Shown: one piece after another, positions 1 to 44,689 of the stretch
Layout: every line of letters starts with the position of its first letter
Numbering within the stretch: the stretch's first letter is position 1
DNA from: Octopus bimaculoides
Taxonomy: Eukaryota
Direction: 5' to 3'
NCBI RefSeq assembly: GCF_001194135.2
Contig: NC_068981.1
Span: forward strand, 172,395,742 to 172,459,741
DNA length: 64,000 nt
The notes under the pieces: model-generated
What the model saw: the letters and a program-made list of their open reading frames with translations, nothing else
The model's database searches: none
Told to the model about the DNA's origin: nothing
Position numbers and translations under genes: made by a program

Positions 1-276
1 TATACAATAAGATCATTATTTTTGTATATATACATATGTGTGTATGTATATATATATATATATGTATTTACATTATTTATAATGGATGGATAGGTGTCCT
101 CATCTTGTTTGTTGTTATCACAACATATCAGCTGATGTACTCTCCAGTTTTCATCAGGTGTTCTGATGGAATTTCAAACCCAACCCTTTATTTGACTAAT
201 GGGGTACACTGTTCTCATTCCTAAGGTATGTTGCTGATGTTATTTTTCTGTAGATATATATATATATATATATATA

Positions 277-1062
277 CTTATATATATATTGGTGAGAACT
301 GTACAAGCCCTGTACAGGGGTGCTGTCAGTAAGGTGAGGGTTGGCAACAAGTATAGTGACGAATTCCAGGTAGATGTAGGGGTTCACCAAGGATCAGTCC
401 TCAGCCCCCTCTTGTTCATCATAGTCCTCCAGGCAATAACAGAGGAATTCAAGACAGGTTGTCCCTGGGAGCATCTCTGTACTGATGACCTTGCTCTAAT
501 AGCTGAATCACAACCAGAACTAGAGAAGTTTCAAGTGTGGAAGCAAGATCTAGAATGGAAGGGCTTTATAGTCAATCTAGCTAACACCAAAGTCTTAGTT
601 AGTAGGAAAGCAGACAAATCACAAATCCTTTTCGATCTGCAGAAAAGGCATGGGTAGAAACTCCATAAGATGTACCCAGTGTAAGCTATAGACATATAAG
701 AGGTGCAGCAATGTCAAAGGAAGGTTAACTGGGAAGATAGTTTTTGTGTCTGGCAGATGCACAGGGACAATAAACACTAAAGATGTACAGAAAACAGTTG
801 ATAGCTTCCATTACCTAGGTGACCAAGTCAATAGCAGGGGTGGATGCTCTGAGAGTGTAGCTGCTAGAATAAGAATAGCCAGGGCAGAGTTCAGAGAGCT
901 CCTACATCTGCTGGTAACAAAGGGCCCCTCACAGAGAGTGAAAGGTAGACTTTGTGATGCATGCGTGCGAACAGCCATGTTACACAGTAGTGAAACATGG
1001 GCTGTGACTGCTGAGATCATGCATAGGCTTGAAAGAAATGAAGCTAGTATGTTTCACTGGAT
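277..1062 (+). mobile_element. RTE-clade LINE reverse transcriptase fragment (degenerate)
   Basis: ORFs 289-657 and 746-1216 give GVHQGSVLSPLLFIIVL..., CTDD (degenerate YADD), FHYLGD and MLHSSETWAV, typical RTE RT and C-terminal motifs. It is frameshifted. Confidence 0.9.
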
Positions 1063-1151
1063 GCGTGTGTGTGTATATATATATATATATATACACACAC
1101 ATACGTACGTACATATACATATGTCCATATATATATATGTACATATAATTA

Positions 1152-1258
1152 GATTGGAGCCTGGTGAAGCCATCCAGTTGCACCAGTCCTCAGTCAAATC
1201 GTCCAACCCATGCTAGCATGGAAAGCGGACGTTAAACGATGGTGATGATGATGATGAT
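1152..1258 (+). mobile_element. Family-B repeat 3' part
   Basis: gattggagcctggtg...catggaaagcggacgttaaacgatggtgatgatg. Confidence 0.8.
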
Positions 1259-1598
1259 ATATGTGTGTATATATATGTATGTACATATATATATGTTATT
1301 CAAATCTTTATACTTCCAACATATGTTTCAAAGAAAACATTGGTATTATTCCTGAGGGAATAAAATGATGTAAAACACTGTAATCAAGGAAAAAAGAGAA
1401 ACAAAACACTAAGCCATTTTAACCGATGAGATAATTACATTGTTTTACATCATTTTATTCTCTCAGGAGTAATACCAATGTTTTCTTCGAAACATGTCAG
1501 AAATATAAAGATTTGAATAACACCTGCGTTTAACTTCATTTTATATATGTATATATATGTGTGCGTGTGTATATATGTATGTATATAAAAGTATATAT

Positions 1599-1765
1599 GT
1601 AGGCATGGCTGTGTGGTTAAAAATTTCATTTTGATACTGCATAGTCAATGGTTCAGTTTGCCTATGTAGGTGTGGTCTTTTGCCTTTTGCTACAGGTGCA
1701 AGTCAACCAATATCTTCTGAGTGAATTTGGTAGATGGAATCCAAAGGAAGCCTGTTATATATGAG
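1599..1765 (+). mobile_element. Degenerate family-A SINE 5' part
   Basis: gtaggcatggctgtgtggtt...gagtgaatttggtagatggaa...gaagcc. Confidence 0.6.
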
Positions 1766-2650
1766 TGTGTGTGTTTGTCTGTGTGAGTTTTCGCTTATCA
1801 ATATCTTGATATGTATTCATTGAATGTATAAAACCACCTTGCCTTTCAAACTTATGATGTCCTTTGCTTGCAGTCCACAACAAAAGCATGTCTGGGCTTC
1901 TTGACAGTTTTTGACATGTGCAATTCTTGTTTAAAAATAGTGTCTATTTCCAGTTCTGTATGTTACTATGTCAGGGTTGTTTGTTGTTCAATAGATCCTA
2001 AGTAATGGAGGTGTTATTACCTTGCTTGGAAATAGATGGTGGGGTTGGTATCAGGATTGACATCCAAACATAGAAAACGTCTGTGGCACATTCTCAGGTG
2101 ACACACACAAGCAAAGAAAAGTGAACATTAAAATGATAACAATGATGGTGGTGTGTGCATGTATTTATGTATACGTGTGTATGTATATATATCTAGACAT
2201 GTGTACACACATACACATGTATGTTATCTTTCTTAGCTTATTTTCATTTCAATTATGCAGATTACATAATTACTTAGGCCATAATGTTTTAAATGTTACA
2301 TTTGCTGATATCAAGATAGGACAAAGGCTATGTTGATGACAGTTGTTGAGGCAGAAATGTGTCACAGCTGTCATCTTGAATTTTCTTTTCTGGCATGCCA
2401 GTTTTGGAGAAATCCTGATTGTTGAGATTATCTCCTATTCTAATTTGGCACCAATTATCACATGCAATTAGTTTACCTTCACTGGAAATAGACATAATTT
2501 CCATTAATCAAGAAATTATCTTAGTTATTTAATTTACCTTTGTCTTTGTTGTTCAGTTACATGCCACTGATCACTCTGAGTTATTTTTCTTATTTTCTTT
2601 TATGCATATATATATATATAAGATAGATAGATAGATATGTATGTGCGAGA

Positions 2651-2688
<38 letters not shown>

Positions 2689-3406
2689 CAATGTACATAA
2701 ATATCAAACAATGAAAGTGAGCACTCAACACCACATTGGTGGATAAAGATTCTTTATTTGTGTTTGTCTCTAAATGGAGACGAACACTGATGTTCCATGT
2801 GATAGGCTTGATAACTGTTAAGGGCTTCCTTTACATGAAACCAATGGTAGCCTTAATCTGTAAATTAAGAGATATATCAATGTATATATATATTGACATT
2901 TGCCTAACAATAAATGCATATATATGTAGGTGTCGTCATTTTAATTATCATTTTAATGTCCACTTTACCAAGCTTGCATGAGTCTGATGAAATTACATTA
3001 GAGTAAAGATACCTATCCTCACCTGTTTCCAAGTAAGGTGATAATGCTCCAGTCTATCAAACAACAACCACCTGGACAGGGTTACATGGAGAACTGGAAA
3101 CAAACACCATTTGAATGAGTCTCTTGTTTACAAAGATCACCCAAAATGTCAAGAAGCCCAGACATGTTTTCACGGTGGTCTGCAAGTAAAGAACAATGTA
3201 TGGACAGCAACGCTGTTGTTTACAGTCAGAGAACACACATGCAGACAAGGGGAAATACAAACTTACTCACAAACAAGTATCTTCAGTTTCTGCCTACTAA
3301 TTTCATTTTCAAGGTATTGCTTGACCCACCACTATAGTACAGAATGCCTGCTTATTGTGTTCATACAGGAAGGACATACACCTAACCAGGTGGTTCCCAA
3401 GATATG

Positions 3407-4650
3407 TATGAGGTGGTATCAAAGAGTTCCCAGACTTATGTTTAATAAAAAAATAACTTATTTACCTAATTTTTAACATCATCTCCTTCAAAATAGTCAC
3501 CTTGTGCAGCAATACACCAGTCCCAGCGTTCCTGCTGCTTTTGGAATCCAACCTGGAAGTTGTTTTTCATAAGTGAGTCAAAGACTTTCTGTGATTCGCT
3601 CGTTTTCAACAACGGTGTTAAAACGGCAGCCTTTGAGCTGCATTTTCACCTTGGGGAAGAGAAGGAAGATGCTAAATCTGGCAAATAGGGAGGGTGTGGA
3701 AGCAATACCATGTTGTTTTGGGCAAAAAACTCATGAATGAGGAGAGCTCAGTGTGCATTGTGTCGTGAAGAATCCAATTCTTTATGCTCCACAGATCTAG
3801 TTGATTTCACCAAATGCCCTCCCTCAAACGCTTCAAAATGTTGCAGTAGAACTCTTGATTGACAGTCTGGCCCTGGAGGATGAATTCTCAATGCACAATA
3901 CCACGAATGTCAAAAAAACGATGTGCATGCTCATGATTGAACTACTACTCTGTCGTGTCTTCTTCAGTTGTAGAGATGCAGGCCTCTTCCATTGTGATGA
4001 CTGTTGCATCATCTCATGGTCGTACCCATAGACCCAACTTCCATCACGGGTGATGATCCTCAACATGAAGGATGCTTCATCAATGGTACACCGACGGAGA
4101 TCTTGACAGACTTCAACATGATGTCCTTTCTGCTGTGGTCAGCAGGTGAGGGACAAACTTAGCAGATACACGCCACATGTTCAATTCAGACGTTAGGGTT
4201 GCCTGCACAGACCCATATGACAGACCAACAACATCAGCAATGTTGTTGATTGACCTTCGACAATCCTCATGCACAAGCTGATGAATCTTCTCCACATTTC
4301 TGGGGGTGACACTCGTGGCAGGTCTTCCAGGTCGCTCATCATTTTCCAGGGACATTCTTCTGCTTTTGAATATGCCCATGCCACTCAAAACATTGCATAC
4401 AACCCATTGCCTCATCGCTATAAGCTTGTCAAAGTGTGCTCTGTAGCAGACTTCCCAAGTTTAATGCAAAATTTCATGTTGGCTCTTTGTCCATGACAAA
4501 AGCAAGGATTTCACAAGTTGTGAAATAAACAGTGATGTCACTCACCACACTGCCTCATGAAGGTCACTGCTAGCTCTCACTGTGCACACAACCATGTACT
4601 ACCATCTGTTGGTGTACTACAGAACTAATCTGGGAACTTTTTGATACATA
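3407..4650 (-). mobile_element. Near full-length degenerate mariner (DD34D) DNA transposon
   Basis: TIRs (tatgaggtggtatcaaagagttcccagact / aatctgggaactttttgataca). Minus-strand fragments include ERPGRP, SAKFVPHLLT (WVPHEL-like), ITRDGSWVY and PHPPYLPDLA. About 1.25 kb with multiple frameshifts. Confidence 0.88.
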
Positions 4651-4894
4651 TATGTAGATATGTAAATAATTCACACACATATATGCACAAACATGAGTGT
4701 GTGGATCATATCATTTTAATGTTTTTTTTCTACGCCTGAAATGAAAGTTGGCCAGATACCCTTACTGTCACTGAATCAAACCTCTTAAGACAAGAGAAAG
4801 CTACAAATTCATATGCACATACACATCTATATACACATCTATACACACACATTATGATATACATATATACAATTATATATAAGTATATACACAC

Positions 4895-5465
4895 ACAAGG
4901 TGCATTCCAGGTGTTTTGAGACCTTTTCATGAGAGACATTTATTAATTTCTGAGAAGTACAAAAGTCTAATCTCCTTCAAAGTGGGATCCTCTGATTTCA
5001 GTGCACTTGTTGTAGCACTCCAGCCACTTCATGAACGCTCTATTGATATCCTCCAAAGTGAAGGTGTCCAGGACCCTTCTCACAGCCTTATTCATCTTCT
5101 CAATGTATTCAAAACAACTGCCCCCTAAGGTTCTCCTTCAGCTTGGAGAACAATCAAAAGTCACAGGGAGCAAAGTCTAGTTATAGGGAGAGCAAGGGAT
5201 AGTTTAGATGTCCATTTCTATCAAGTAATTGGTTACCAGGAGAGAATTGTGACAATCGGTGTTAAGTAGCTGTAATAAGCAGTGTTTAATTGGGTGTCTT
5301 CAGTGTGCTGTTACAGCCATCCCCTTCAATCAGGAATAAAAAAAAAGTTGGCAGATGTGAATATTAGATGTATAAAAAGGATATACTAAAATTTCAATAA
5401 TCTAGGACAGTTATAACTGCCTCTCCTAAAAAAAAAGTCTCAAAGCTTCTGGAATGCACTTCATA
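4895..5465 (-). mobile_element. Internally deleted mariner (MITE-like) retaining both TIRs and the transposase C-terminus
   Basis: Left aggtgcattccaggtgttttgagac and right gtctcaaagcttctggaatgcacttca are inverted copies. The minus strand encodes degenerate (SPD)FAPCDF-LFSKLKENL...KWLECYNKCTEIRGSHFEGD*. Confidence 0.8.
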
Positions 5466-5537
5466 TATACATGTGTGTGTGTGTGTAGTGTACTGTTCCA
5501 TTAAGGTAAGATAAACAAAATGATCTTACCTTAGATG

Positions 5538-5580
<43 letters not shown>

Positions 5581-8500
5581 TGTATCATCATTTCACATCA
5601 ATGTTCCATGCTGGTATGAGTTGGACAGTCTGACAGAATTTGATAGGACCAGACACTGCATCATGCTCTAGTATCTGCTTTGCCTTGGTTTCTACATTTG
5701 GATGCCTTCCTAATACCAACCACTTTATTAGGTTACTATGCAGCATTCAAGACTATGACCCTCGATGGAGCAGCTTTGTGCTTGGATATGAGCAGTAAAA
5801 GTATAAGGAGCCACAGCAGAACACACATGTATATGTATGTGTATGCAGGGCTTCTCACAGTTTCTGTCTGCCATTTTCTCTCACGAGAGTAAGCAAAACT
5901 CTTTGTAGGCTCCTGCTAACCATTACTACAATCCCTTTAATAGCTACAAATGGGTTTGCCAGCAAATAGGTTAGCCTCTGAAAGTCATTGGTGTTGTCAC
6001 ATCTGGTGGCAAATCCTCTGCTTAAGAGTCAGTTCCACTTATACCAACTAATAAACAATAACACCACTCTGTAAAAGGTACAGAAGGAAGCAGCACATCA
6101 AGATATTAAGTTACCTTCGAACCAGAGCTTTTCAAGAAATATCTGCTTCAGAGTTAACTTCACGAAATTTACTCAATGTCCAGGTGAAGTGATAATATTA
6201 GACTCTCTGATGAATTAAATATACCACCCTTAGTCATATGCTTCCTGAAATTACAGAAACTAAGTCCATCTCAGTCAATGCCAACAGAAAAACTATTACC
6301 ATTGTTACTTCAGTATTGAAATAAATTCGCTCATGGGTTTCTACTCAGCTACATGGTTTCTCTTCATATTTCCTGATAGTGTCAAGTTTTTCATGGTCAC
6401 ATTATATATTCTCCAAAAATTAATTGAAAGAGACCATGGTTGGAATATGAGAAACTGCTTTCCTATTCATAGTATTTTAGAGATATTATTTGGAAAAAAA
6501 TTGTAAAGGTTCCTTTCATGCAACTATTTCATTTGTAATGGTATTTTTGTCATATAGTCAAGTCCTGATACTTACCAGAGAATGTTATTCTTTAAACAAA
6601 AATGAAAATGAAATTTTGTATAAGGTGTGTATATGTGTCTGTCTGGACTTGGAGAGAGTGTTAACCTTGCTTGAAAATAGATGAAGGTTGGAAATGGGAA
6701 GAGCGTCCAACCAAAGAAATCTGCTTCAGTGAATTCTGTTTGACTCATGCAAGCATGGAAAAGAACAAAATTATATATATATATGTGTGTGTGTATGTAT
6801 ACACACACACACACACATTTTCTGTGGTGCTGTAATATCAGTTTTATCTGGAATCTAATTTTCATTTTCATACATTTAAAACGTTATCTCACTCTCTTTA
6901 CAAACATATTACTTCTCAATAAAAATTTTATTGATATGAATGTATAAATTCTCAGTGTTTCCATTAATGTGCGTAAAGTAAAAATCAAAATATTTGTTAT
7001 TATCATCATTATTAATTCTCTTTCTTTACACATATCAATGATATTTTGTAAGCCAGTTCTTTGATATTAACATAGGATAAGTAAACTTTAATATTATCTT
7101 TATTCGAAGTCTTCTGAAGGAACACCATTTCACCAATTTATAAAGCTTTTTCTCTTTCAGCTGAGCTAGCATTTGTTTTTTTTTTGTGTTAATCACAGCT
7201 CATTTCCACTTTACTTTTCATCTTTATCTATAAAATAAATCTTCAGTATTTATTCTTACTTAACATTTTTTTTTTCTAATATGTAATTGTACTATCTACT
7301 TTTATTGTCATAACATAGTTTTATTTTTTTATTTATTGACTTTCATTTGTTTTTTTTATATTTTACAAATTTGCTGTTTTAGCTTACATTTTAATTTTTA
7401 TGTTTATTCTAAGGGTAAATAATTTTCCACAACATTTTTTGTTTATTAATGTTAATAACAAAATCAGCTCTAAAGTTTACATACTCTTAGTTCCAAATGT
7501 ATATTCTTTAAAACAATTATGTAATTATCAAATATTGTCTTAATCAATTAGAAAACACTAAAGATCACTTAACTGAATTTTGAGTTAATAAACTATTGTG
7601 TTATTAATCTTCTAACTACTCTCATCATTTAAGAATGCCAAAATTTAAGTTTGATTTGGTTTTTCTCCATTTTTATCCACCAGATGTCATTGTAATATGC
7701 TGAAGGTTTTATTTTTTACTTTGGGCAGTTAATATACATCCTTTCTTAGATAAAATACTGGTTTTCTCATAGTTCTTTCCCATATGGTCTAAATGAATAC
7801 TAAAAACTAACAAAATACATACCATTTACTTGAGTTGATGAACTGTACCTCTTCCAGACCTAACTACACTTGAGTAGACTGGGATATTGAGATACACAGC
7901 ACAGCATTTTTGACTAGAATGCTTGTGACTTAACAATCTGATCAGCTGGAAGGCTGCCTATCATTAAATACATCTTCACTATATTCAGGTTCAAACAGTT
8001 TTTTATTCCTTATGGGTCTCATACCAATCAAAATATTTTTCAATTTCTATGAAATATAAAAACGAAATTGAAAGTGTACAAGTCAATTCCATTGGAATAT
8101 GTTCCAACTAGTGCATTACTTAAATCTCTCATTCAACTCTCCATAATATCTTATAAAATAAACAAAATGCTTTTGTTTCAAACCTGAAGCTCAGTCAATA
8201 ATTATCTATTTTCATTAATGATTTATCATGATTAAAGCTTCTAAATAATGACAATTAAAATATTAACTGATCAATCTGCTCAGTTATTTCATCAGTTGAC
8301 ATTTCATGTTACTGCAGCTATTTTAATTAATCAGCCCTTCCCTTCTTTAATATCTCATTTAGTCCTCATGTCATTATGTCAATTCTAAAGCCCTCGCTGT
8401 AACTCTCCTTGTGTTACATCAAGTAGCCTTTCATGTGACATATCCCTTATCATGTCCTGTCAGTATCATTGCCTTGTCATGCCCAGTGTTGCATTTAGAC

Positions 8501-9436
8501 CCCTGTCCCCAATACATTATCCACTAGGCTTTAAACTAATGTTGTGCAGTTGATATCAATGTTTAACCCTTACAGGCTGACTTGTGGAATTGTATTTCTT
8601 TTTTTTAAACTTTTGCATTGTTTTCTGCTGTTTTTTTTAATTGTTTGTTTATATTTGTTTTATGTTAAAGCTGCTTGTCTAAATAAATTCATGTTTTTTT
8701 TTTTGTTTTTGTTGTTTTTAATAGGAATTTCCATTCTTATGTTTTCATGTTAATGGCAAACTATGAATGTAACTGTACAGTTTTATATGTTATGAATAAT
8801 TCAGAGATGTATATATCAATCAGATGTTTTTAAATAAGCAAAATAATCTTTACTCTATGGGCAGTTAGGTAACATACAAAATAATCATTGATATTCTAAC
8901 TATGAGTAGCTGCTGTTATCTATTCAAACTGTACTTTACCTGTTTTAGCATTAGTTGATCAGATCAGTAAAATTTGCTTCTGTTCTTCATTTTACCTATG
9001 AAATGCTATTTGTTACATAATAAATTCTAACAGATACTTTATGTTGCATTACATTTGTATTTGTATGTATATATGTAATGTGTGTGTACACACTCACATA
9101 TTCATATGTTTGTGCATGCATGTGCTCAGTATATAGTTATTAGCTGGTTTGTTAACTCATTGACAGCAGTAACTAAAATCTATCCATGATAGATTTATAT
9201 AAATTGTCCCAATATAATTATTAAATTACTAGAAGTTATGATCTTTAAACGGGTGGAAGACAATATCAATACCATAAACTAGTTTGTAATGTTTTTATAT
9301 TCAGTTCTTTTTTGTCATTATTTTAAGAAATCACTTCTGTATATCGTTTGTTTCTAGAAATAACTCTTGGGGAAAATTATATGTGTATATATATAAATAT
9401 GTACATACATACACACCCATACATATATATATATAA

Positions 9437-9470
<34 letters not shown>

Positions 9471-9489
9471 AAATGTGTGTACGTGTGTG

Positions 9490-9526
<37 letters not shown>

Positions 9527-10401
9527 AACCACTATTTCGTCTGACTGTAAGAATGGAAAATTATGCAATGGATCTAAAATGTTGAAATGTTTTTGTTTTT
9601 GTTTCTTTATAACTGACGCACTTACTAATAATATGTTTTCCGTTATTTCCCTTTGCTTGCTGGGAATCTATATCAATATTTGGTAAGTACGATTATCTGT
9701 TTATTAAATATCTTTTTAGGATTTTTTTAATTAGCTAAGATTATTCTAGTTAAAAAATAACAGAACACTTAGGAGTATCATAAGTGATTGGTGGTGTATT
9801 TTAGTATTTCTGTTTTAATATTTTATGATAGTTTTTTTCTTTTTAATAAGGATGCATTAATGAACAGTTGTTAAAGTATGCTAGTATCTATTTTATAATT
9901 TACTGAGGTGTAAAGCAAAATAAGACTAAGTTGTTATAAGCAAAGGTAATTTTGAATAAAACTGCAGTTTTGAATAAAATTTGCAGTCAAATCAGGTTAG
10001 ATCTTGGTAAACAAAGCAAGAAATATTTTAAGCTCTAAAGATTTTTGGCTTATTCATTTTTTGTTTATAATTTTAGTTACTTATAATCTTGAGGTTGAAG
10101 TTTCAATCATACATCTAAAGGTATATGGTTGAATAAACCAAAAATGTATATTCTAAGTTCAGTTTAAGCAGTACTAAGCAAGGATTTTATTTATAAATGC
10201 TTTTAAATCAGCATATAGCTAGCTACAATGCAACATATCACATGTAATTTTGAAGACCAACCATACATTAAATACAGATCTAAATTATATAACTCTGAAT
10301 TTTATGAAGATCAGAAATGTTGATTTATAATAACTATTAGTAAAATACTTAAAATATTTGACGAGAAAGCTTAATGCTGGTTTCAAAATATATTTCCACT
10401 G

Positions 10402-10446
<45 letters not shown>

Positions 10447-10706
10447 CATAATTATGTGGTTAAGTTCTTCATCATAACTACATTGTTTTAGGTTTGAACT
10501 CACTGCCTAAAACTTTGGATAAGAATCTAAGATCAATTAAAAATCCTTATGCACGAAATTTTTAAGGCAGATATTTAGGGTGAAAAAACTGAATTCCAGA
10601 AAAAAGCAGTAGCAAACCAGCCCTGTAAAGCAGCCGAAACAGCCTTGTAGATGTGGTTGTTCCACACAGCTACTTGAAATTAAGCTTAATAGGTTCTATA
10701 TATATT

Positions 10707-11323
10707 NNNNNNNNNNNNNNNNNNNNNNNNNNNNNNNNNNNNNNNNNNNNNNNNNNNNNNNNNNNNNNNNNNNNNNNNNNNNNNNNNNNNNNNNNNNNNN
10801 NNNNNNNNNNNNNNNNNNNNNNNNNNNNNNNNNNNNNNNNNNNNNNNNNNNNNNNNNNNNNNNNNNNNNNNNNNNNNNNNNNNNNNNNNNNNNNNNNNNN
10901 NNNNNNNNNNNNNNNNNNNNNNNNNNNNNNNNNNNNNNNNNNNNNNNNNNNNNNNNNNNNNNNNNNNNNNNNNNNNNNNNNNNNNNNNNNNNNNNNNNNN
11001 NNNNNNNNNNNNNNNNNNNNNNNNNNNNNNNNNNNNNNNNNNNNNNNNNNNNNNNNNNNNNNNNNNNNNNNNNNNNNNNNNNNNNNNNNNNNNNNNNNNN
11101 NNNNNNNNNNNNNNNNNNNNNNNNNNNNNNNNNNNNNNNNNNNNNNNNNNNNNNNNNNNNNNNNNNNNNNNNNNNNNNNNNNNNNNNNNNNNNNNNNNNN
11201 NNNNNNNNNNNNNNNNNNNNNNNNNNNNNNNNNNNNNNNNNNNNNNNNNNNNNNNNNNNNNNNNNNNNNNNNNNNNNNNNNNNNNNNNNNNNNNNNNNNN
11301 NNNATATATATATATATATATAT
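10707..11323. other. Assembly gap (617 N); further gaps at 15206-15277 and 44234-44243
   Basis: N runs, each abutting a (TA)n tract. Confidence 1.
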
Positions 11324-13255
11324 ATGCATGCTTTATTAAATTTAGGAAGTTTATTAACCAATTAAAATTTGAACAGTTCATACTTTCTAAAGGCTTCTCA
11401 TGTTTAGTGGAGAGAAAGTATATATTAGATGCTCTGACAAAATGAAGGGTTGAATAAATTTTCAGCTTTTGCTTTAGATAGTGTCAGGGTAGAAGTTGAT
11501 TGTTATATAAACATGCATACCAAAGTGACTACTTCATATCAATGCATCCACAGAACACTCCCAAATTATTTCATCACTTAGACATTACCTGCTGTATTTC
11601 CGTCCCAATATCCTACAGACCTTTCACTCCTATCTGTGTGCATGAAAGAAATCTCTATAAATACATGTAGGCAATCTCTGATTATGTCTACTTTCTATGT
11701 TGATACTTATTCAGTATGTCCCCTCCCCCAACGAAAAAGAAAACAGTTATTATTGGCTATAAGAAAAGGTGAATGTTCAATTCTTTCTCTTAGTTTAGTA
11801 GTACTAATATATCTACTTCCCATACTAACTTAAGAGTCAGTGGAAAGTATGAACACCTCAATAGTGAACTGGTTAAAAAAATTGTCCTCAGTTTAAGCAA
11901 AAATGTAGTGTAAGTCAAGAGCTGTATTCCAATGTTATAGAGATGTAGATCATGTTTGTATAACTTTTCTTTGGTTTTTTTTTCTTTTCTTTTTTTTTTT
12001 GCATATGTATTTTTGTCATTGTGATTCTGGAGCTTTGATTTTCAAACGGTAACATTTTAATAGACTTAACTAATTATTTCTGTTTATATATATATTCGAC
12101 TTACACAGTTGGTATGATATGATAGTTTCTTTAAGATTTTCAAATCTATAATATAATAAATGTCAGTTTTGAGGACTCACAGATGACTCCATCAACAATA
12201 TTGAACTATTAGCTATGAACTACATTGTGCCTTGTCTGCAGCCCAAACAAGTCTGGTACAGTCCACTGAATTGTAAAATAAATATCAGTATTGATAATAG
12301 CTCACTACTATAAGAAAGGTGACCAGTGTATAAGCCAGTGTTGGAATAGCTGAAAATGTACAGTACACATCCTACTGAGTTTGAAGCATGATAAATATGT
12401 TTATGCTGCAGTCCTGTTTAAACTAGATCTACATGTCCTCACGTAAAAATGAATGAATCTGTTATTTTCACTCACATAGTGAAACATTGTGTGAATAAGT
12501 AAATCTAAGTTGCCAACTAATTGATATTTATAATTGATTAAACCCATTGTAGTAGAAATCTACAAATCTCACCCCACAATGGAGTTAGCTTCAGAAAATG
12601 TATTGTTACTTTCTAGATATTTGTCATAGAAGTTAACAAGGTGGAAATATGATAATCCAAAATCTGAAATTCCTAATTATTCATTGCTGGGAAAATATTT
12701 AATATTAACAGTTTAATAAAACAACTGTGATAAGCCAGCTGCATGAATTTGCTGTAATGTTGGTCTTTAATATATATCTTGCATACATTGCCTGCTCTGA
12801 TCAGCCTATATCATGTCTCCCCACAGTTACTTTTCATAAATAACACAAACTTTTTTTGTTTTTTTCTCTTTCTGAAAAATTCTGTGTATTTTACTGTGTC
12901 TATTCATTTCCCATAAATAATCATCACCATCTCATGAAGTTGGAATATCATCCAGCCTTTTCAGATTGGGCCCTATTTAAACAGCTATGTAAGGGATAGA
13001 AAAATAGAAAGAAGTGACTGGTTTTTTTTTTTTTGGTTTTTTTTTTTTGGAGGTGGGTGTATTGAGAAGATACACAACCTCCATATGGACATGCTAGAAA
13101 CATCAGACATGTCTTTCTCAAATCACTCTTCTCATCTTTAAAAAAAGGGATGGACCAGATATACTAAGTTTGAGGGAAAAGTTGGGATGGCCATGGCAGA
13201 AATATCTTTGACCATAGGTCTGCATGAGCAACAACAGTTTTTATAGCATAGTTAA

Positions 13256-13408
<153 letters not shown>

Positions 13409-14018: not shown

Positions 14019-14116
14019 GGAAGAGAGCGAAAGTGTACTGCAGTTGAAGGGACTTACTCCAAATGGTTTGCTACCTCTCGGAGCGCTATCTGGTGGCAAA
14101 GATACTCTGAGAAGTG
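14019..14116 (+). CDS. PPP3CA: Calcineurin A exon [32 protein letters not shown] (phase 2 in, phase 1 out)
   Basis: Acceptor ctttacAG (14017-18) and donor GTAAGG (14117). The phase matches the previous exon (AG|G = Arg). It matches the conserved EESESVLxLKGLTPxGxLPxGxLSGGK segment. Confidence 0.97.
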
Positions 14117-15279
14117 GTAAGGTTGTCTTCAGTCATAATTTAAGCATGAACTTGTTATTTCATATATATATATATATATATATACTAGCTGTTTTTTTCC
14201 GGTTTCACCCGGGTAGTCTGGTTGATGTTGCTGTAAAACCTGCTATCTTCTAAATATTTACCTCCTCTTTGTATTCAAACACCAAAAATAAAGGTTTAAA
14301 AAAAAATATATTTTAAGAAAAAAAAATCCAAATTAATAAAAATGTTAAGTTGCTGATAGCTATAGTAACTGGAAGGTTTCAGCAAACACACATGCGCATG
14401 CATGCACACACACACATACACACATGCACACACATATAGTCACACAGAGTTGAAACGCTGAAAAAAATAAATCCACACATAAAAATGGAAATATATATAT
14501 GAAACCAAAAACCACTATATATGTATATATATATAAATTTGACATCACCACTTCCCTCCTTATTTATCACCCCTTCCTTTCTCATTCATAAACAAGAGTA
14601 TTATTATAGTAGATTATCTCGGTAATCATGAGAGCTATGAAAAGATACAAAGCCCAGCATCACCACCGGATCATTCTACACATCTGTGTAATTTTTCGCG
14701 CTATTCCACCCAGCTGTTTCACTGTGAATCCCAAGACGAGAAAGAATCACCCGTGTCAAATTTATATGTATAGATGTATATATATATATAGATATATGCT
14801 TACATGTATTTAATTCAATGGCAGTGAATGGTGGGTCCACTTTGGTGCAATGATTATTGCGATTGGACATTACTCAACAGATCAAGGTTCAGTTCTCATT
14901 GGTAATTTTGTCTGCTTTTTTCTATTTTATACTGTGCTTGTGAATATATTCAAATCTTAACCATTTATAAATATATTTTTGCAAGAAGAGGGTAACAGTG
15001 ACTTCAAAGTTTTGGCCTGTTAGCCTTCACCAGAGAGTCCAATAAAGGCTAGAAGGTTGAAATTTTGAAGTCATTGTTGCCCCTCTTTGTGTAAAAATAT
15101 AATAAATATGTACACTATGAAAAGTACTGAGTAATATATTTCAGTTTACAGTTAAACTGTTTTTATTATAACTCAACATAAAAACAAACATTAATATATA
15201 TATATNNNNNNNNNNNNNNNNNNNNNNNNNNNNNNNNNNNNNNNNNNNNNNNNNNNNNNNNNNNNNNNNNNNNNNNNAT

Positions 15280-17753: not shown

Positions 17754-18718
17754 GTATGTATATATATATATATGGGCTGGACGGTTTTACTGAAAACTGG
17801 TAATCTCCCTGACTTACCAGTTTTCAGTCAAACTGTCCAACCCACCCATGCCAGCATAGAAAACAGACATTAAATGTTGATGATATATATATGTATATTG
17901 CATTATTTGTTCAAGACTAAGAATTTCAAAGTTTCCAGAGTTACTCACTGTATGTTATCCTTCTATTAAAGGACACATATTGCAAGAAACTCTAGCATCT
18001 GAATGAATCATCTTTTATCAAAATGAACTAAACTGTATCACATGTAACAAGTACTCTTTGTTCTGTTTGTATATTCTCACATAAATGTATTGCTTTATAT
18101 ATATTTTATATTTATGAAATTGTGTAAAGTTCTCTTTCAGTATATATTGTTTAATTCTTTTTCCTTTCCTTTTTTTTTTTTTTAATGTTTTTGTATTGTT
18201 GTTTGCGATTTTACCTTGTTTTGATTTCAGAACTTAAAAATATCCCTTTATGGTTATAAAAAATAGAAACATTTAAAAACCAATATTAGCCTTAATGTTT
18301 CTCATTTTGGTTTTCACCGACAACCAAGGGAGCCTCTACATAGCTGTTCAACTTGCTAGAAATAGCAGACAAATCTCCCTCAAGTTACACAATACCATCT
18401 TAGAAAAAAGTGGCACATTGGATGATGTGGTCCTGGGTGCATTGTGCCTGGGAAGAAGACAGGATGGTCACAGCAAGAATGCCTTTGGTTTATAGGTCTG
18501 TTTGATCAGACCTGAGGCTAAACAATAGCAACAACGATCTCCAAAGAATTTCAATCATGCATTAGCTGTATTCACTTTAGTATTTGCTATATAAATCAGT
18601 ACTGAGTTGGGGTACAAACACACTTATCTCAACTATGAAGTATTTTTCTTTTCATAGTCAGAGTGGAATATTTAATTTTTTCATTTCAATTTTTTAAATG
18701 TCTTTTTTATTCATTCAG

Positions 18719-18754
18719 CTATCGATAATCCGAACGAGGAACCAGCTATCAAAG
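18719..18754 (+). CDS. PPP3CA: Candidate 36-nt cassette micro-exon of calcineurin A encoding AIDNPNEEPAIK
   Basis: Pyrimidine tract ...tcttttttattcattcAG (18717-18) and donor AAAG|GTTAGT (18755). Length is 36 nt, phase 1-1, with no stop. It lies at the position of the vertebrate alternative exon ATVEAIEADE. Confidence 0.7.
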
Positions 18755-21700
18755 GTTAGTTTTCTATTTAGGATTGTATAGTTGAGAGACACTGGCATGT
18801 GCACGGCAGTCATAGGTAACTGTTTGTTTATTGGGGGTGCAAAGAGCAGCAACAAAACAATGGTGCAACACTTAAGTGCAGCAGGTTTGGGTCTAAATAT
18901 CTCCATTATTTTCTCTTCAATACACTGCATAATATAAAACATCTTCATATTTTAATCAACCATGCTATCTAGCACAATCAGAAAATAAGTCACTACTGCT
19001 AATTGTGAATAACATATTTTTTCCTACAATTCCTCTCATAGTTACATTCAGGGAAGTAGTACATGACAATCTAAATGAGGAATTGGAAGATCAATGCCAA
19101 TTAACTATATCCTTGCAGCTTTCACTCTGGCTTTTCCGTCCTAAAAGAAAACTTTGGAGAAGACATTTCAGCCACTGCTTCAATTTCCATTGCCACTAAA
19201 ATCTACTTCTAAAAATCACTACATTGGGCCAAGAGGCATTTAGAAACCCATTGTTTAAAACATTACAACAAACTAGACATAATGGCTTTAATCACTTAAA
19301 ATAAGCAGCACTCCAAAATGGGTTATTAGAATGTGTGAGAATTAAGTTTGAAATTGATACAAAGAAAAATATTTGAAATTTATAAATTTTTCTTTTATTC
19401 CTCCTGGCACTTTGCTAAAATTTACTCTAGGCTAAATATATCTACTAACTGCTTTATAAATATATGTAGAATAATTTCCTAAATAATTTTTTTATTATTA
19501 TTTCTGTATAAAAGAAACACAAGAAAAATAAAATAAATACTTTTACTATATATTTTAACATATTTTAAGATTAGTCCTACTAAAATCTAAACATCTAAAA
19601 TACGCTATTTACATTTCTCAGCTTAATAATAAAATACTGCCAAGCTTGGAGACACAATTTAACTTCATTGAGATTTTACCACATTACTGAAGGCTCCAAA
19701 TACCCAATGATTGTAAACCTTGAAATTCTAAAACATTGATGTAATGAAGTAAACAAACTGGTTGCTGTGATGAATTTCTCTAGCATTTTGTATAACCATT
19801 ATAATATCATACAAATGCATTATAATAGGGATAAAATAAAATGTAGTTGAACTTTAAAAATTTAGGAGCCAAAATTTAGCTTTGACTCTAGATAGACCAT
19901 TTTATAAATCCCCATCCCATCAATTATTAATAAACCATTCATTTAATCATTTAAATATTATATAATCTTCCCAACTTTTAAAGATTTTTTTTTTTTTTTG
20001 TCTTCTTTTTATTTTTCGTTTCTTATTATTCACTATAATATACTTTCACTACACTAAACAAACTTTGTATTCTTTTATTGGCTGCTATTGAGTTCATGTT
20101 TCCTTGTTCAGTACAAGATAAAACTATTTGACATAATTTAAACACTTATACTTTACAATATGAAAATTATGTTTAGAACCCATAATATGTTTAAAATATA
20201 TATTCAAAATAGTTAATTATTCAGTAGGACATTTTAAGGGTTAAGGATGTTGTTTGTGTGGGACTATTTTTTTTATTCCATATTCACAAAAAAAATTATT
20301 AGCATTTATGTTAATTATTTTAAATATTTCTGAATTCTAATTATTTTTTATATAAACTAATTCAAGTTAAGACTACTAATTTTGAAAAGATCTAAAACAA
20401 AAACTGCTAGATTTTTAACTTAAATTTTATTATTTCAATGTTTTAGTTTGTTTGTTTTTTTTTTGTTTTTTTGTTTTTTTTTTGCTAATTCAAATTTTAT
20501 TATGTTACTTTGGCAAAGAAAGCCCAAGAAGCACTTTTAAAATCCCTATCTGATGTAATAGTTCATATCAAAATAATTCTCTCAGTAAAATATTCATCCT
20601 GCATATGAACTTGAACTTAAAGGATTTTTTTCAACAGTTCAAATCAGACATAGTAGATAATATATTAATAGATCAATATGAATAATAGATTGTCCAAGTT
20701 GGCATGATTATTATACTAGAGAAGATTAGTCTTCTCAGAATCAGAATTCTAAAGTACTCAGTTAACTTCAAATTAATGTTATTTCTGTATATAATGGTTT
20801 GTTGGTTACAGAGATTACTTTAAACCTCACTACATGTTTGACTTGGCAAAAGTCTTATTTATGTAGTGCATTCTGCTAACTAGAGTTAGTATGTAATCAG
20901 CCATTTAATTGTTTAATTACTACACATGTTTTTACTTTTACATTATTCAAATAACATTGGTTCAGACTGATTCTTTGGTTTCCATTTGCTTATTTAAATA
21001 TTTATTTGGCTTTGCTTTTAGCAAAATTCATCAAATACAAGTAATTAGATTAATTGTTCCTTAAAAAAAAAAAAACTGTCATTAGCTTTCATATAGTACC
21101 TGCTTTCTTTTGTGTTTCATCACGATTGCTGCTTCTGCTGCTGCTAGAAACTAATTTTTTTTTTGTTGTTTTTGTTGATGTCTTGACTGTAGAAATAACT
21201 GTTGTTTATAGCTTCCTGTCTGGTTTTAGGCTGCTTTCCAAATTCAGTGTTGTCACACTGTAGGGGTTTCAATTTTAGAGGAATTGATTGCTATAAAATC
21301 AACTGAAGTACAATGTGTGCTTGCTTGTTAGAAAATATTAGCAAATGTTTTAAGTAATTCCAAAAACCTGTTGAACTAGATAAAAAAATAAAAATAGGTT
21401 AGTTTATTTAAAGTTGACTGAGTTTTCAAATTTCAAAGAATATATCTGTAAAAGCTTCTTGGAACTACAAAAAATGTTTTTTTTTTTTTTATTTACCTAT
21501 TTTTATGGAATTGTTGTTATGATGATATCTGCTCATATATCTTCATATTGCCTGGAAACATTTATAAACTCAATCAAATTTAAATAAAGGCTCAAAACAA
21601 GAAGCAACAAAACCACAATTTAACATCAGGCTAGCTATGTTTTGCTCTCTCTCTTTCTTTCTATGATCAACTTCATCTCAAACTTCTCCAAGTAGCTAAC

Positions 21701-24746: not shown

Positions 24747-24874
24747 CACTCAGTGGTTTTTCTCCTACCCACAAAATAAGTGGGTTCGATGAAGCCAAGA
24801 GTTTGGATAAATTGAATGAACGCATGCCCCCGAGAAGAGATGCAGTCAATACCAATAACAAGGAGAAAGCGTAA
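24747..24874 (+). CDS. PPP3CA: Calcineurin A terminal coding exon with autoinhibitory domain
   Basis: Acceptor tttcattgcAG (24745-46), phase 1. It translates (A)[41 protein letters not shown], matching the AID motif ([23 protein letters not shown]). The stop is TAA, followed by TGA. Confidence 0.97.
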
Positions 24875-25828: not shown

Positions 25829-25869
<41 letters not shown>

Positions 25870-25890
25870 CATACATATATATATACATAC

Positions 25891-25966
<76 letters not shown>
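25790..25966. repeat. Compound (TA)n/(TG)n/(TACA)n microsatellite; representative of many (e.g. 16105-16300, 17694-17772, 35175-35246, 9380-9520)
   Basis: Seen directly. These repeats generate the spurious YIYIYI/THTHTH ORFs in the track. Confidence 0.98.
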
Positions 25967-37734: not shown

Positions 37735-38400
37735 CAGGACCAGAGACAGAGACATAATGCTTCTGCTTTGGAGAATCTTTGTCCTCAGTCGTCTGGACTA
37801 CTGCTCCCAACTGTGGTCTCCACAGAGTGTAAAACTAATTGCGGAACTAGGGGCAATCCAATGCCACTACACAAAGAAGATAGACTCAGTAAAACACATG
37901 GGCTACTGAAAGAAGTTAAAGGAACTGGGACTCTATTCCCTGGAGAGGAGAAGTGAGAGATATGCAGTGCTATACATATGGAAAATAATGGTGGATCTAG
38001 CTCCAAATTTCAGAATCAAAATCTACAACAATCTCCGAACTGGACAGCACCAAAGATCCCATCTTCTCCATTGAGGATAAAAATCCAAAGGTCTCATTTT
38101 CTCCATTGAGGATAAAAATCCAAAGGTCCCATCTTCTCAATTCAGGATAAAAATAGCTTGGGATTCAAGGGACCACAACTTTTTAATGCCCAACCACAGA
38201 ACATAAGGGATCGGTGAGGTGTAGATATGGATGTCTTCAAAAACGTCTAGACAGTTTTTTTATCTGCAATATCAGATGAACCCACATCGCGGCAGGAGAC
38301 ACAAAGAAGAGCAGCAATGTCCAACTCACTACTTCACCAGAAGCAATACTGGAAAAATCCCTGGATGCAGTAAAGGTGGCGCACCAGTATAGCCTCAGCC
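37735..38400 (+). mobile_element. CR1-group LINE C-terminal fragment
   Basis: VLSRLDYCSQLWSP...IQCHYTKKI...ELGLYSLERRSERY matches the CR1/L2-type post-RT motif (LEYCSQVWSP...LYSLERRR). It contains stops. Confidence 0.8.
38050..38154 (+). repeat. 3 x 35-bp tandem repeat
   Basis: Unit ccaaagRtcccatcttctccattgaggataaaaat starts at 38050, 38085 and 38120. Confidence 0.95.
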
Positions 38401-41873: not shown

Positions 41874-42442
41874 TCATCATCATCATCGTCGTTTAACATC
41901 CACTTTCCATGCTGGCATGGGCTGGACGGTTTGACTGGGGACTGGTGAACCAGATGGCTGCACCAGGCTCCAATCTGAACTGGCAGAGTTTCTACAGCTG
42001 GATGCCCTTCCTAATGCTAACCACTCCGAGAGTGTAGCAGGTGCTTTTACGTGCCACCAGCACGAGGGCCAGTCAGGCGGTACTGGCAACAGCCATGCTC
42101 AAATAGTGTTTTTATGTGTCACCTGCACAGGTGCCAGTCCAGCGGCACTGGCAACGCCCTCGCTCGAATGTAGTTTTCCACATACCACCGGCACAAGTGC
42201 CAGTAAGGCGATGCTGGTAACAATCACGCTCGAATGGTGCTTTTTATGTGCCACTGACACGGGGGCCAGTCAGCAGCCCTGGCAACGATCACGCTTGGGT
42301 GGTGCTCTTAGCGATCTACTAGCACGGATGCCAGTCATGCGGTGCTGTCATCGAATTTGTTTCTGATTTCACTTGCCTCAACAGGTCTTCACAATGAAAG
42401 AAAAGTACGCCTAAGTGGGCTGGTTATACCACTGGCATAGGC
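41874..42442 (-). mobile_element. Family-B repeat ending in (ATG)n (RTE-tail-like SINE) with internal ~66-bp tandem units
   Basis: catcatcgtcgtttaacatccactttccatgctggcatgggc... is shared with 1152-1258, 5583-5725, 37168-37645, 47278-47560, 52058-52200 and 59345-59510. Confidence 0.8.
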
Positions 42443-44233: not shown

Positions 44234-44689
44234 NNNNNNNNNNTAGCGCGGACGCGCAACCACTCTGCTTTAGTAAGTACCCTTATACTCTCTGTTTTCA
44301 AACGCATGGATATAGGTGTCAAATTTGTTCTAATAACTTTCGAGTGATAGATAGATAGATAGATAGATAGACAGAGAGAGAGAGACAGACAGACAGACAG
44401 ATAGCTCGCTCCGGCCAGTCATGGTATTAGCTGTCAGTAGCCAAAGAATCAACTCAAACCAGCAGTAACGTTCCTTGTCAGATTTTTCTACTTTCACTTC
44501 TGACAGCTAATACCATGACAGTGCCCAATACTCTAAATAAGTTATTTTGAACCTTCTGTAATCCAATGCCTCCTTTCAACGAAGGGAGTTTCAGTCAAAA
44601 CCCCCACCTCGTATCATTTCTGTACCATTTGAATATTATTACTGTTATGAATAATTTATGTTGTAACATCAACTTGGATACCTCTGCTT

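What the first reader, a model, noticed from the sequence alone, without database searches (positions are those of the whole stretch)
18719..18754. Hidden 36-nt calcineurin A micro-exon between the CaM-binding and autoinhibitory domains, with a nested 9-nt option
Seen in sequence: a clean acceptor and donor, phase 1-1, no stop, encoding AIDNPNEEPAIK. It is too short for the ORF track. CAGCTATC occurs twice (18716 and 18743), so an internal AG at 18744-45 would give an in-frame 9-nt exon (AIK). A GCATG (RBFOX-type element) lies about 40 nt downstream (18795-99). Established: vertebrate PPP3CA has an alternative 30-nt exon (ATVEAIEADE) at this intron position. Inference: an independently evolved or deeply conserved regulated insert that could tune autoinhibition, plausibly neural.
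Basis: partly seen in the sequence, partly recalled or inferred. Interest (0 to 1): 0.7.

Follow-up and report, generated by a model that had tools for sequence, protein, structure and literature searches.

The report
Annotated octopus calcineurin A cassette micro-exon
The 36-base segment is a real, alternatively used mini-exon of the octopus calcineurin A gene, conserved in cuttlefish and already present in public octopus protein models, so it is genuine but not a new discovery.

Summary
Window 18719-18754 is a 36-nt, phase 1-1 exon (AIDNPNEEPAIK) with a good acceptor and donor, and it ranks first of 329 in-frame AG..GT candidates in its 10.6 kb intron. It is real. The window's C-terminal exons joined through this exon match RefSeq or GenBank calcineurin A models of Octopus sinensis, O. 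bimaculoides and O. vulgaris exactly, and other models of the same genes skip it. RNA-seq assemblies of the cuttlefish Sepia esculenta and of a second decapodiform carry both forms (Sepia: inclusion in 37 index blocks, skipping in 71). Octopus and Sepia share 35 of 36 exon bases. It is therefore a coleoid-wide cassette exon and is already annotated, not hidden. The nested 9-nt option has no support: a weak acceptor, no annotated isoform, and five exact look-ups all negative. The GCATG has about a 10% chance expectation, and its conservation could not be tested. The exon sits at the same protein position as vertebrate PPP3CA/B exon 13 (30 nt, distal-helix region), but it contains two prolines and little sequence similarity. 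I judge parallel origin more likely than deep homology. Neural specificity and the effect on autoinhibition remain untested.

The parts
13332..13407 (+). Calmodulin-binding exon of calcineurin A ([26 protein letters not shown]). An alternative upstream acceptor makes the exon start at 13323 (+9 nt, AQP).
   Evidence: tblastn of human PPP3CA and P0009; base positions; isoforms P0241 (no AQP) and P0242 (AQP)
14019..14116 (+). Constitutive exon encoding (R)[32 protein letters not shown], ending in phase 1. Donor GTAAGG at 14117.
18696..18718 (+). Pyrimidine-rich tract and acceptor AG (18717-18) of the micro-exon.
   Evidence: 75% pyrimidines in the 20 nt scored
18719..18754 (+). 36-nt cassette micro-exon, phase 1-1, encoding AIDNPNEEPAIK.
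   Evidence: identical peptide at this junction in RefSeq/GenBank Octopus isoforms and in Sepia RNA-seq contigs; skipped forms also on record
18755..18760 (+). Donor site GTTAGT (8 of 9 matches to MAG|GTRAGT counting the exon end AAG).
18744..18745 (+). Internal AG proposed as acceptor of a 9-nt (AIK) exon. No evidence of use.
   Evidence: the AG is also present in Sepia and in species B, but it is formed by a Pro codon third base plus an Ala/Gly codon first base
18795..18799 (+). GCATG pentamer 41 nt downstream of the donor. Not above chance, function untested.
   Evidence: 67 GCATG in 64 kb; P of at least one in 100 nt = 0.10; context GGCATGT
24747..24874 (+). Coding part of the last exon: [10 protein letters not shown] followed by the autoinhibitory domain [23 protein letters not shown]..., stop TAA at 24872-74.

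Best explanation
Window 18719-18754 is a genuine alternatively spliced cassette exon of the single octopus calcineurin A (PP2B/PPP3C catalytic subunit) gene. Inclusion inserts 12 residues (AIDNPNEEPAIK: three acidic residues, one lysine, two prolines) into the disordered regulatory domain. The insert lies 32 residues after the calmodulin-binding segment and 10 residues before the autoinhibitory domain, so the tether between the two grows from 42 to 54 residues. The exon is conserved across coleoid cephalopods (octopus, cuttlefish, a second decapodiform), and both isoforms are made. These points are shown. What follows is inferred. By analogy with vertebrate exon 13, which lies at the same position, encodes the core of the 'distal helix' and changes NFATc3 signalling when skipped, the insert most likely tunes how effectively Ca2+/calmodulin binding pulls the autoinhibitory domain out of the active site. 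Because of its two prolines it probably acts as a flexible acidic spacer, not as a helix.
For: Sequence, frame and splice sites. Gene identity: the window exons align to human PPP3CA residues 390-493, and the full-length proteins that end in the window's exact C-terminus carry PF00149 Metallophos. Annotation: nine Octopus isoforms from O. sinensis, O. bimaculoides and O. vulgaris end with the window's C-terminus including the exon (for example XP_036363202, XP_029638432, XP_014777769, CAI9716440). Three end with it skipped (XP_036363211, XP_029640434, XP_014777765). Transcripts: a 1874-nt Logan contig encodes a 502-aa protein with the exon. In Sepia esculenta RNA-seq the inclusion form P0252 is in 37 index blocks and the skip form P0255 in 71, including neighbouring runs of one study (SRR19578101/112 versus SRR19578114). 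A second decapodiform has inclusion (AIDNPNDEPGIK, 8 contigs) and skipping (4 contigs). Conservation: Octopus and Sepia share 35 of 36 exon bases against 84% in the flanking coding sequence, and third codon positions changed 1/12 against 31/74, Fisher p = 0.03. Position relative to vertebrates. Human exon 13 is residues 447-456, inside the distal helix 441-458 (PMC7456046). Isoform 1 prevails in the CNS (PMC11662586). Forcing skipping of Ppp3ca/b exon 13 drives Nfatc3 into nuclei (PMC5577920).
Against: No biochemical or tissue-resolved data exist for the cephalopod isoforms, so the functional part is analogy only. For the window's own species, usage rests on RefSeq/GenBank models whose read support I could not inspect; raw junction reads were not available. 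The extra nucleotide conservation is modest (p = 0.03 for one species pair and not seen against species B, which has two amino-acid changes). The AlphaFold model of the inclusion isoform was unusable in this region (pLDDT below 50).
Confidence: 0.85

Rival explanations
1. The segment is a chance AG..GT open frame in a long AT-rich intron (a pseudo-exon) and is never spliced in.
For: 329 in-frame phase 1-1 AG..GT candidates exist in the same intron, so such frames are common.
Against: The exact peptide sits at the exact junction in annotated isoforms of three Octopus species and in spliced RNA-seq contigs of two decapodiform species. It is also the top-ranked candidate.
Confidence: 0.01
2. The exon is alternative in a second way: the internal AG at 18744-45 is used as a nested acceptor, giving a 9-nt exon (AIK).
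For: The frame is kept. The AG is present in Octopus, Sepia and species B. Nested shorter versions of vertebrate exon 13 are annotated in a fish (P0192, AIEADE).
Against: The 20 nt before this AG are purine-rich exon sequence (35% pyrimidines), and the candidate ranks 36th of 329. None of the 12 Octopus models retrieved has it. Five constructed AIK/GIK-only full-length proteins are absent from the collection, while three of the four matching skip constructs are present. The AG is explained by codon usage (CCA|GCT, CCA|GGG).
Confidence: 0.06
3. Inclusion is neural and driven by an RBFOX-type factor binding the downstream GCATG.
For: GCAUG lies 41 nt downstream of the donor, a position where RBFOX binding promotes inclusion in vertebrates (established knowledge). 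Vertebrate exon 13 inclusion prevails in the CNS (PMC11662586).
Against: A single pentamer without the preferred 5' U. GCATG occurs about once per kb in the window, so the chance of one within 100 nt is 0.10. Conservation could not be checked because no orthologous intron DNA was obtainable. Both isoforms are assembled from whole Sepia larvae, which says nothing about tissue. There is no UGC motif near the acceptor, so it does not look like an SRRM4-type microexon either.
Confidence: 0.15
4. The exon is the direct homologue of vertebrate PPP3CA/B/C exon 13, an alternative exon that was already present in the bilaterian ancestor.
For: The insertion point is identical in the protein alignment, and the first residue is Ala in both. 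Both inserts are acidic. A salmonid paralogue reads AIDTETEDGE against octopus AIDNPNEEP. Small inserts occur at the same site in Limulus, in an unidentified lophotrochozoan (AEEG) and in a MERC sequence. An annelid-like contig has a strong unverified 27-nt candidate, ETATALEAA, in the same intron.
Against: The same ancestral intron forces any new in-frame exon to share position and phase. The retrieved isoforms of chiton, gastropods, bivalves, Lingula, an acoel and most arthropods lack an insert. A mussel-like intron has no credible candidate. The peptides are short and of low complexity. The octopus insert has two prolines where vertebrates need an amphipathic helix.
Confidence: 0.2

Closest known systems
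The same exon as annotated in RefSeq/GenBank calcineurin A isoforms of Octopus sinensis, O. bimaculoides and O. vulgaris
   Same: The 111-residue C-terminus is identical, including AIDNPNEEPAIK, and skip isoforms are annotated alongside.
   Different: Nothing at the protein level. The window is simply the genomic locus of these models. Which of the three species the window comes from was not resolved.
Vertebrate PPP3CA and PPP3CB exon 13 (30 nt, ATVEAIEADE / ATVEAIEAEK)
   Same: A cassette exon at the same position of the regulatory domain, between ...TLQS and AI[KR]GFSP. It is alternatively included and acidic. The skip forms have the same 42-residue tether in human and octopus (PMC5577920, PMC11662586).
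   Different: 30 nt against 36 nt. The vertebrate peptide forms the core of the amphipathic distal helix 441-458 (PMC7456046), whereas the octopus peptide has two prolines and an NPN motif and is unlikely to be helical. Sequence similarity is weak. Homology is not shown.
SRRM4/eMIC-dependent neural microexons
   Same: A short, frame-preserving exon conserved over long evolutionary distance, placed in a disordered regulatory region of a signalling protein.
   Different: 36 nt exceeds the usual 3-27 nt class. There is no UGC motif upstream of the acceptor. Neural specificity is unknown.
Vertebrate Ppp3cb/Ppp3cc exon 10a (27 nt), upstream of the calmodulin-binding segment
   Same: Octopus isoforms also vary just upstream of the calmodulin-binding exon (AQP, AEL, a Q-rich insert, GFNT). 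The AQP variant comes from the tandem acceptor at 13321-22 / 13330-31 in the window (PMC5577920).
   Different: This is a different exon from the one in the finding. It is mentioned only as a parallel second variable site.

Membership tests
Calcineurin A (PP2B / PPP3C catalytic subunit) | Metallophosphatase catalytic domain | tested here: met
   The domain is not in the window itself. Full-length proteins that end in the window's exact C-terminus carry PF00149.
Calcineurin A (PP2B / PPP3C catalytic subunit) | Calmodulin-binding segment followed by the C-terminal autoinhibitory domain | tested here: met
   Window 13332-13407 encodes [25 protein letters not shown], 96% identical to human residues 390-414. 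Window 24747-24874 aligns to human residues 457-493, which include the autoinhibitory domain.
Cassette (skipped) exon | Both inclusion and skipping junctions seen in mature transcripts of one species | tested here: met
   Sepia esculenta and a second decapodiform: RNA-seq contigs of both forms. Octopus: both forms in RefSeq models. Raw reads were not inspected.
Cassette (skipped) exon | Canonical AG/GT splice sites and frame preservation | tested here: met
Orthologue of vertebrate PPP3CA/B exon 13 | Same insertion point in the protein | tested here: met
   Alignment A1. The vertebrate intron phase is recalled from memory and was not checked.
Orthologue of vertebrate PPP3CA/B exon 13 | Recognisable sequence similarity of the encoded peptide | tested here: inconclusive
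   AIDNPNEEPAIK against ATVEAIEADE: a shared first Ala and acidic character only. There is a closer resemblance to one salmonid variant, AIDTETEDGE. The peptides are too short to score.
Orthologue of vertebrate PPP3CA/B exon 13 | Presence in lineages between cephalopods and vertebrates | tested here: not met
   The retrieved isoforms of chiton, gastropods, bivalves, Lingula, an acoel and most arthropods lack it. The mussel-like intron has no candidate. Sampling of isoforms is incomplete, and one annelid-like candidate is unverified.
Orthologue of vertebrate PPP3CA/B exon 13 | Encodes part of an amphipathic 'distal helix' | tested here: inconclusive
   Two prolines argue against a helix (inference from sequence). 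The AlphaFold model had pLDDT below 50 here.
RBFOX-regulated exon | (U)GCAUG in the proximal downstream intron, above chance and conserved | tested here: inconclusive
   GCATG at +41, but the chance expectation is 0.10 and it is not UGCAUG. Conservation could not be tested.
RBFOX-regulated exon | Inclusion tracks RBFOX expression (neural or muscle) | not testable with these tools
   No tissue-resolved read data. The Sepia runs identified were whole larvae.
SRRM4/eMIC neural microexon | Length of 27 nt or less and a UGC motif close to the acceptor | tested here: not met
   The exon is 36 nt, and there is no TGC in the 120 nt upstream.

The most novel reading that the evidence does not exclude
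The intron between the ...TL(R/Q)S exon and the A(L/I)xGFSP exon has carried a regulated alternative mini-exon since the bilaterian ancestor. It would be retained in vertebrates (exon 13), in coleoid cephalopods (this exon) and in scattered other lineages (the AEEG insert, the Limulus insert, the unverified annelid-like ETATALEAA candidate). That would make it an ancient splice switch on calmodulin-dependent release of calcineurin autoinhibition. The alternative reading is that it arose in parallel in the two large-brained lineages.
Probability: 0.2. Interest if true: 0.55.

Novelty: already known. Interest (0 to 1): 0.27.

Why it matters
Calcineurin is a central Ca2+/calmodulin-dependent phosphatase in neurons and muscle, and the length and structure of the tether between its calmodulin-binding segment and its autoinhibitory domain govern how it is switched on. 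Vertebrates splice a 30-nt exon into exactly this tether, with measurable signalling consequences. Coleoid cephalopods conserve their own 36-nt exon at the same spot, which shows that this tether is a recurrent target of isoform regulation and offers a natural comparison (a proline-containing spacer against a helix-forming insert) for how tether properties set calcineurin activation. As a discovery it adds little, because the exon is already in public gene models. What is new here is only the cross-coleoid conservation, the co-occurrence of both isoforms in RNA-seq assemblies, and the positional match with vertebrate exon 13 shown in the alignment.

Tried and rejected
1. The first protein search with the 86-aa C-terminus returned only proteins of 151 aa or less, and none had the exon. 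Full-length isoforms appeared only with a longer chimeric query made of the human catalytic part plus the window C-terminus.

2. Orthologous intron DNA from other cephalopods, wanted to test conservation of the GCATG, the splice sites and a possible hairpin, could not be obtained.
- P0241 is not on record as a gene product.
- The O. sinensis gene spans 169 kb, so no DNA was returned.
- The window's antisense ORF 18715-18948 is not on record.
- An exact-pattern scan of metagenome contigs found nothing.

3. The AlphaFold2 model of the Sepia inclusion isoform had mean pLDDT 48.5 and values below 50 across the regulatory domain, so it was not used.

4. Tissue of origin of the RNA-seq runs: accession searches in papers identified only whole-larva Sepia esculenta studies. 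Species B and the source of P0130 stay unidentified.

5. The alternative linker exons seen in Octopus isoforms (AEL, Q-rich, GFNT) were looked for in the window and not found. They presumably lie upstream of the window or in the N gap.

6. An RNA fold around the exon gave z = -1.8, too weak to build on.

7. Literature searches found no paper on cephalopod calcineurin isoforms.

Full report
**Observation.** Window 18719-18754 is CTATCGATAATCCGAACGAGGAACCAGCTATCAAAG. It follows a T-rich tract ending in cattcAG and is followed by GTTAGT. Joined to the exon ending at 14116 (...GGKDTLRS, phase 1) and to the last coding exon starting at 24747 ([10 protein letters not shown]...), it reads AIDNPNEEPAIK in frame, and skipping it keeps the frame too. 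CAGCTATC occurs at 18716 and 18743, and GCATG at 18795. I enumerated every AG..GT segment of 6-75 nt in the 10.6 kb intron that would be in frame and stop-free in phase 1-1. There are 329 of them. By a crude score (pyrimidine content before the AG plus donor consensus) this one ranks first, and the proposed 9-nt version ranks 36th. Exact exon limits in the window are 13332-13407 (or 13323-13407), 14019-14116, 18719-18754 and 24747-24874 including the stop.

**What the gene is.** tblastn of human PPP3CA places human residues 390-414 (calmodulin-binding segment), 414-449 and 457-493 (autoinhibitory domain) on the three flanking exons. My recalled human sequence was confirmed as residues 1-521 of PDB 1AUI chain A. 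Only these last exons of the gene lie in the window. The O. sinensis gene spans 169 kb.

**Is the exon used?** A search with only the 86-aa C-terminus returned short fragments without the exon. A longer query found P0121, a 502-aa protein from an 1874-nt Logan RNA-seq contig that reads ...DTLRS-AIDNPNEEPAIK-ALSGFSP.... Its 90% cluster holds RefSeq and GenBank calcineurin A isoforms of Octopus sinensis, O. bimaculoides and O. vulgaris.
- Nine of these isoforms end in the window's exact 111-residue C-terminus including the exon.
- Three end in it with the exon skipped: XP_036363211, XP_029640434 and XP_014777765.

So the window is the locus of an Octopus calcineurin A gene, and the exon is already part of public gene models. 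It is 'hidden' only from an ORF track.

**Conservation and alternative use in other cephalopods.**
- The inclusion protein P0252 is indexed in 37 blocks of RNA-seq assemblies, and its skip counterpart P0255, which I built and then found by exact look-up, in 71.
- Several of the runs belong to published Sepia esculenta larval transcriptomes (PMC10466719, PMC9538352, PMC10571815). Inclusion and skipping occur in neighbouring runs of one study.
- A second, unidentified decapodiform has AIDNPNDEPGIK (8 contigs) and the skip form (4 contigs).
- At the nucleotide level Octopus and Sepia share 35 of 36 exon bases against 84% in the flanking coding sequence. Third codon positions changed 1/12 against 31/74 (Fisher p = 0.03). 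The contrast disappears against species B, which has three changes.

I conclude that this is a cassette exon conserved since before the octopod-decapodiform split (about 250 Myr by my recollection, not checked here), under peptide-level constraint and perhaps some extra constraint.

**The nested 9-nt option.** The internal AG is preceded by purine-rich exon sequence (35% pyrimidines). None of the Octopus isoforms retrieved has RS-AIK-ALSGF. Five full-length proteins built with only AIK or GIK are absent from the collection, while three of the four matching skip constructs are present. This test is weak against a rare isoform, because exact look-ups need a fully assembled ORF, but nothing supports the idea. 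A real 9-nt alternative does exist nearby. Tandem acceptors at 13321-22 and 13330-31 add AQP at the start of the calmodulin-binding exon, as in P0242 against P0241.

**The RBFOX motif.** GCATG occurs 67 times in the window, about once per kb, so the chance of one in the first 100 nt of the downstream intron is about 0.10. The context is GGCATGT, not TGCATG. There is no TGC in the 120 nt upstream of the acceptor, so the SRRM4-type signature is absent as well. I could not obtain orthologous intron DNA to test conservation.

**Comparison with vertebrates.** Human PPP3CA exon 13 is 30 nt and encodes ATVEAIEADE between ...TLQS and AIKGFSP. Isoform 1, which includes it, prevails in the CNS (PMC11662586). 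Ppp3ca and Ppp3cb exon 13 are developmentally regulated in muscle, and forcing skipping sends Nfatc3 to the nucleus (PMC5577920). These residues (447-456) lie inside the 'distal helix' 441-458, which folds on calmodulin and helps remove the autoinhibitory domain (PMC7456046). In an alignment of 63 calcineurins the cephalopod insert falls at exactly the same point. The skip tether is 42 residues in both human and octopus, and inclusion gives 52 in human and 54 in octopus. The octopus peptide has two prolines and is unlikely to be helical. An AlphaFold model was too poor to say.

**Deep or parallel origin?** Inserts at this point are present in the following:
- all vertebrate paralogues sampled, hagfish included;
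- Limulus (VLASSA);
- one unidentified lophotrochozoan transcript (AEEG);
- a MERC sequence (17 aa).

They are absent from the retrieved isoforms of chiton, gastropods, bivalves, Lingula, an acoel and most arthropods. A mussel-like 1.5 kb intron has no credible candidate. An annelid-like contig has a strong, unverified 27-nt candidate encoding ETATALEAA, which resembles the vertebrate peptides. Any new in-frame exon in this ancestral intron must share position and phase, so position alone does not show homology. I put deep homology at about 0.2.

**Verdict.** It is already annotated, the nested 9-nt and RBFOX elements are unsupported, and function and tissue specificity remain inference.

Noticed in passing
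window 13321-13331: Tandem acceptors 9 nt apart (ttacAG|CACAACCAG|TTGCT) at the start of the calmodulin-binding exon. Use of the upstream one adds AQP, matching annotated isoform P0242 (O. sinensis X5 / O. vulgaris) against P0241.
   Followed up: partly
L001:10642-10668 (ENA ERZ26858995 contig, annelid-like calcineurin locus): In the orthologous 2.4 kb intron the best of 101 phase 1-1 candidates is a 27-nt exon with strong splice sites encoding ETATALEAA. It is Ala/Glu-rich like vertebrate exon 13 (ATVEAIEADE; teleost ETA-ATIEAIEADE). No transcript evidence could be obtained.
   Followed up: partly
L038:6842-6919 and 6970-7056 (ENA ERZ21930238, mussel-like locus): Two tandem copies of the calmodulin-binding exon about 50 nt apart ([26 protein letters not shown] and [29 protein letters not shown]), possibly a mutually exclusive pair or a decayed duplicate.
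   Followed up: no
window 18715-18731 with 18767-18781: The predicted RNA fold pairs the acceptor and the first exon bases with intron +13 to +27, enclosing the donor in the loop. z = -1.8, and 8 of 200 shuffles fold as well. This is weak, and covariation could not be tested.
   Followed up: partly
proteins P0130, P0183, P0017, P0139/P0140, P0192, P0156: Other inserts at the same protein position: AEEG (Logan SRR12719301, taxon unknown), VLASSA (Limulus X2), a 17-aa insert (MERC), an extra ETA/EAS before exon 13 in some fishes, an 18-nt AIEADE version in Pungitius, and AIDTETEDGE in a Salmo trutta paralogue, which resembles octopus AIDNPNEEP.
   Followed up: partly
Octopus isoforms P0243-P0251, P0125 (region not found in the window): A second variable region lies just upstream of the calmodulin-binding exon: AEL, a Q-rich 30-40 aa insert, a 4-aa GFNT piece, and an N-rich version in O. 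bimaculoides. The exons were searched for in window 1-13330 and not found.
   Followed up: partly
window 289-657 (+), 746-1216 (+): An ORF with a reverse-transcriptase match (PF00078 RVT_1, E = 3e-7) and an adjacent ORF. This is a retroelement fragment in the DNA upstream of the calmodulin-binding exon, presumably an intron of the gene.
   Followed up: partly
window 10707-11303, 15206-15277, 44234-44243: Runs of N (597, 72 and 10 bases), that is, assembly gaps. The second lies inside the intron that holds the micro-exon.
   Followed up: no
window 42040-42306, 38050-38154, 25832-25966: Tandem repeats: a 65-nt unit x4, a 35-nt unit x3, and a (TATA)n tract of 135 nt about 1 kb after the stop codon.
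   Followed up: no
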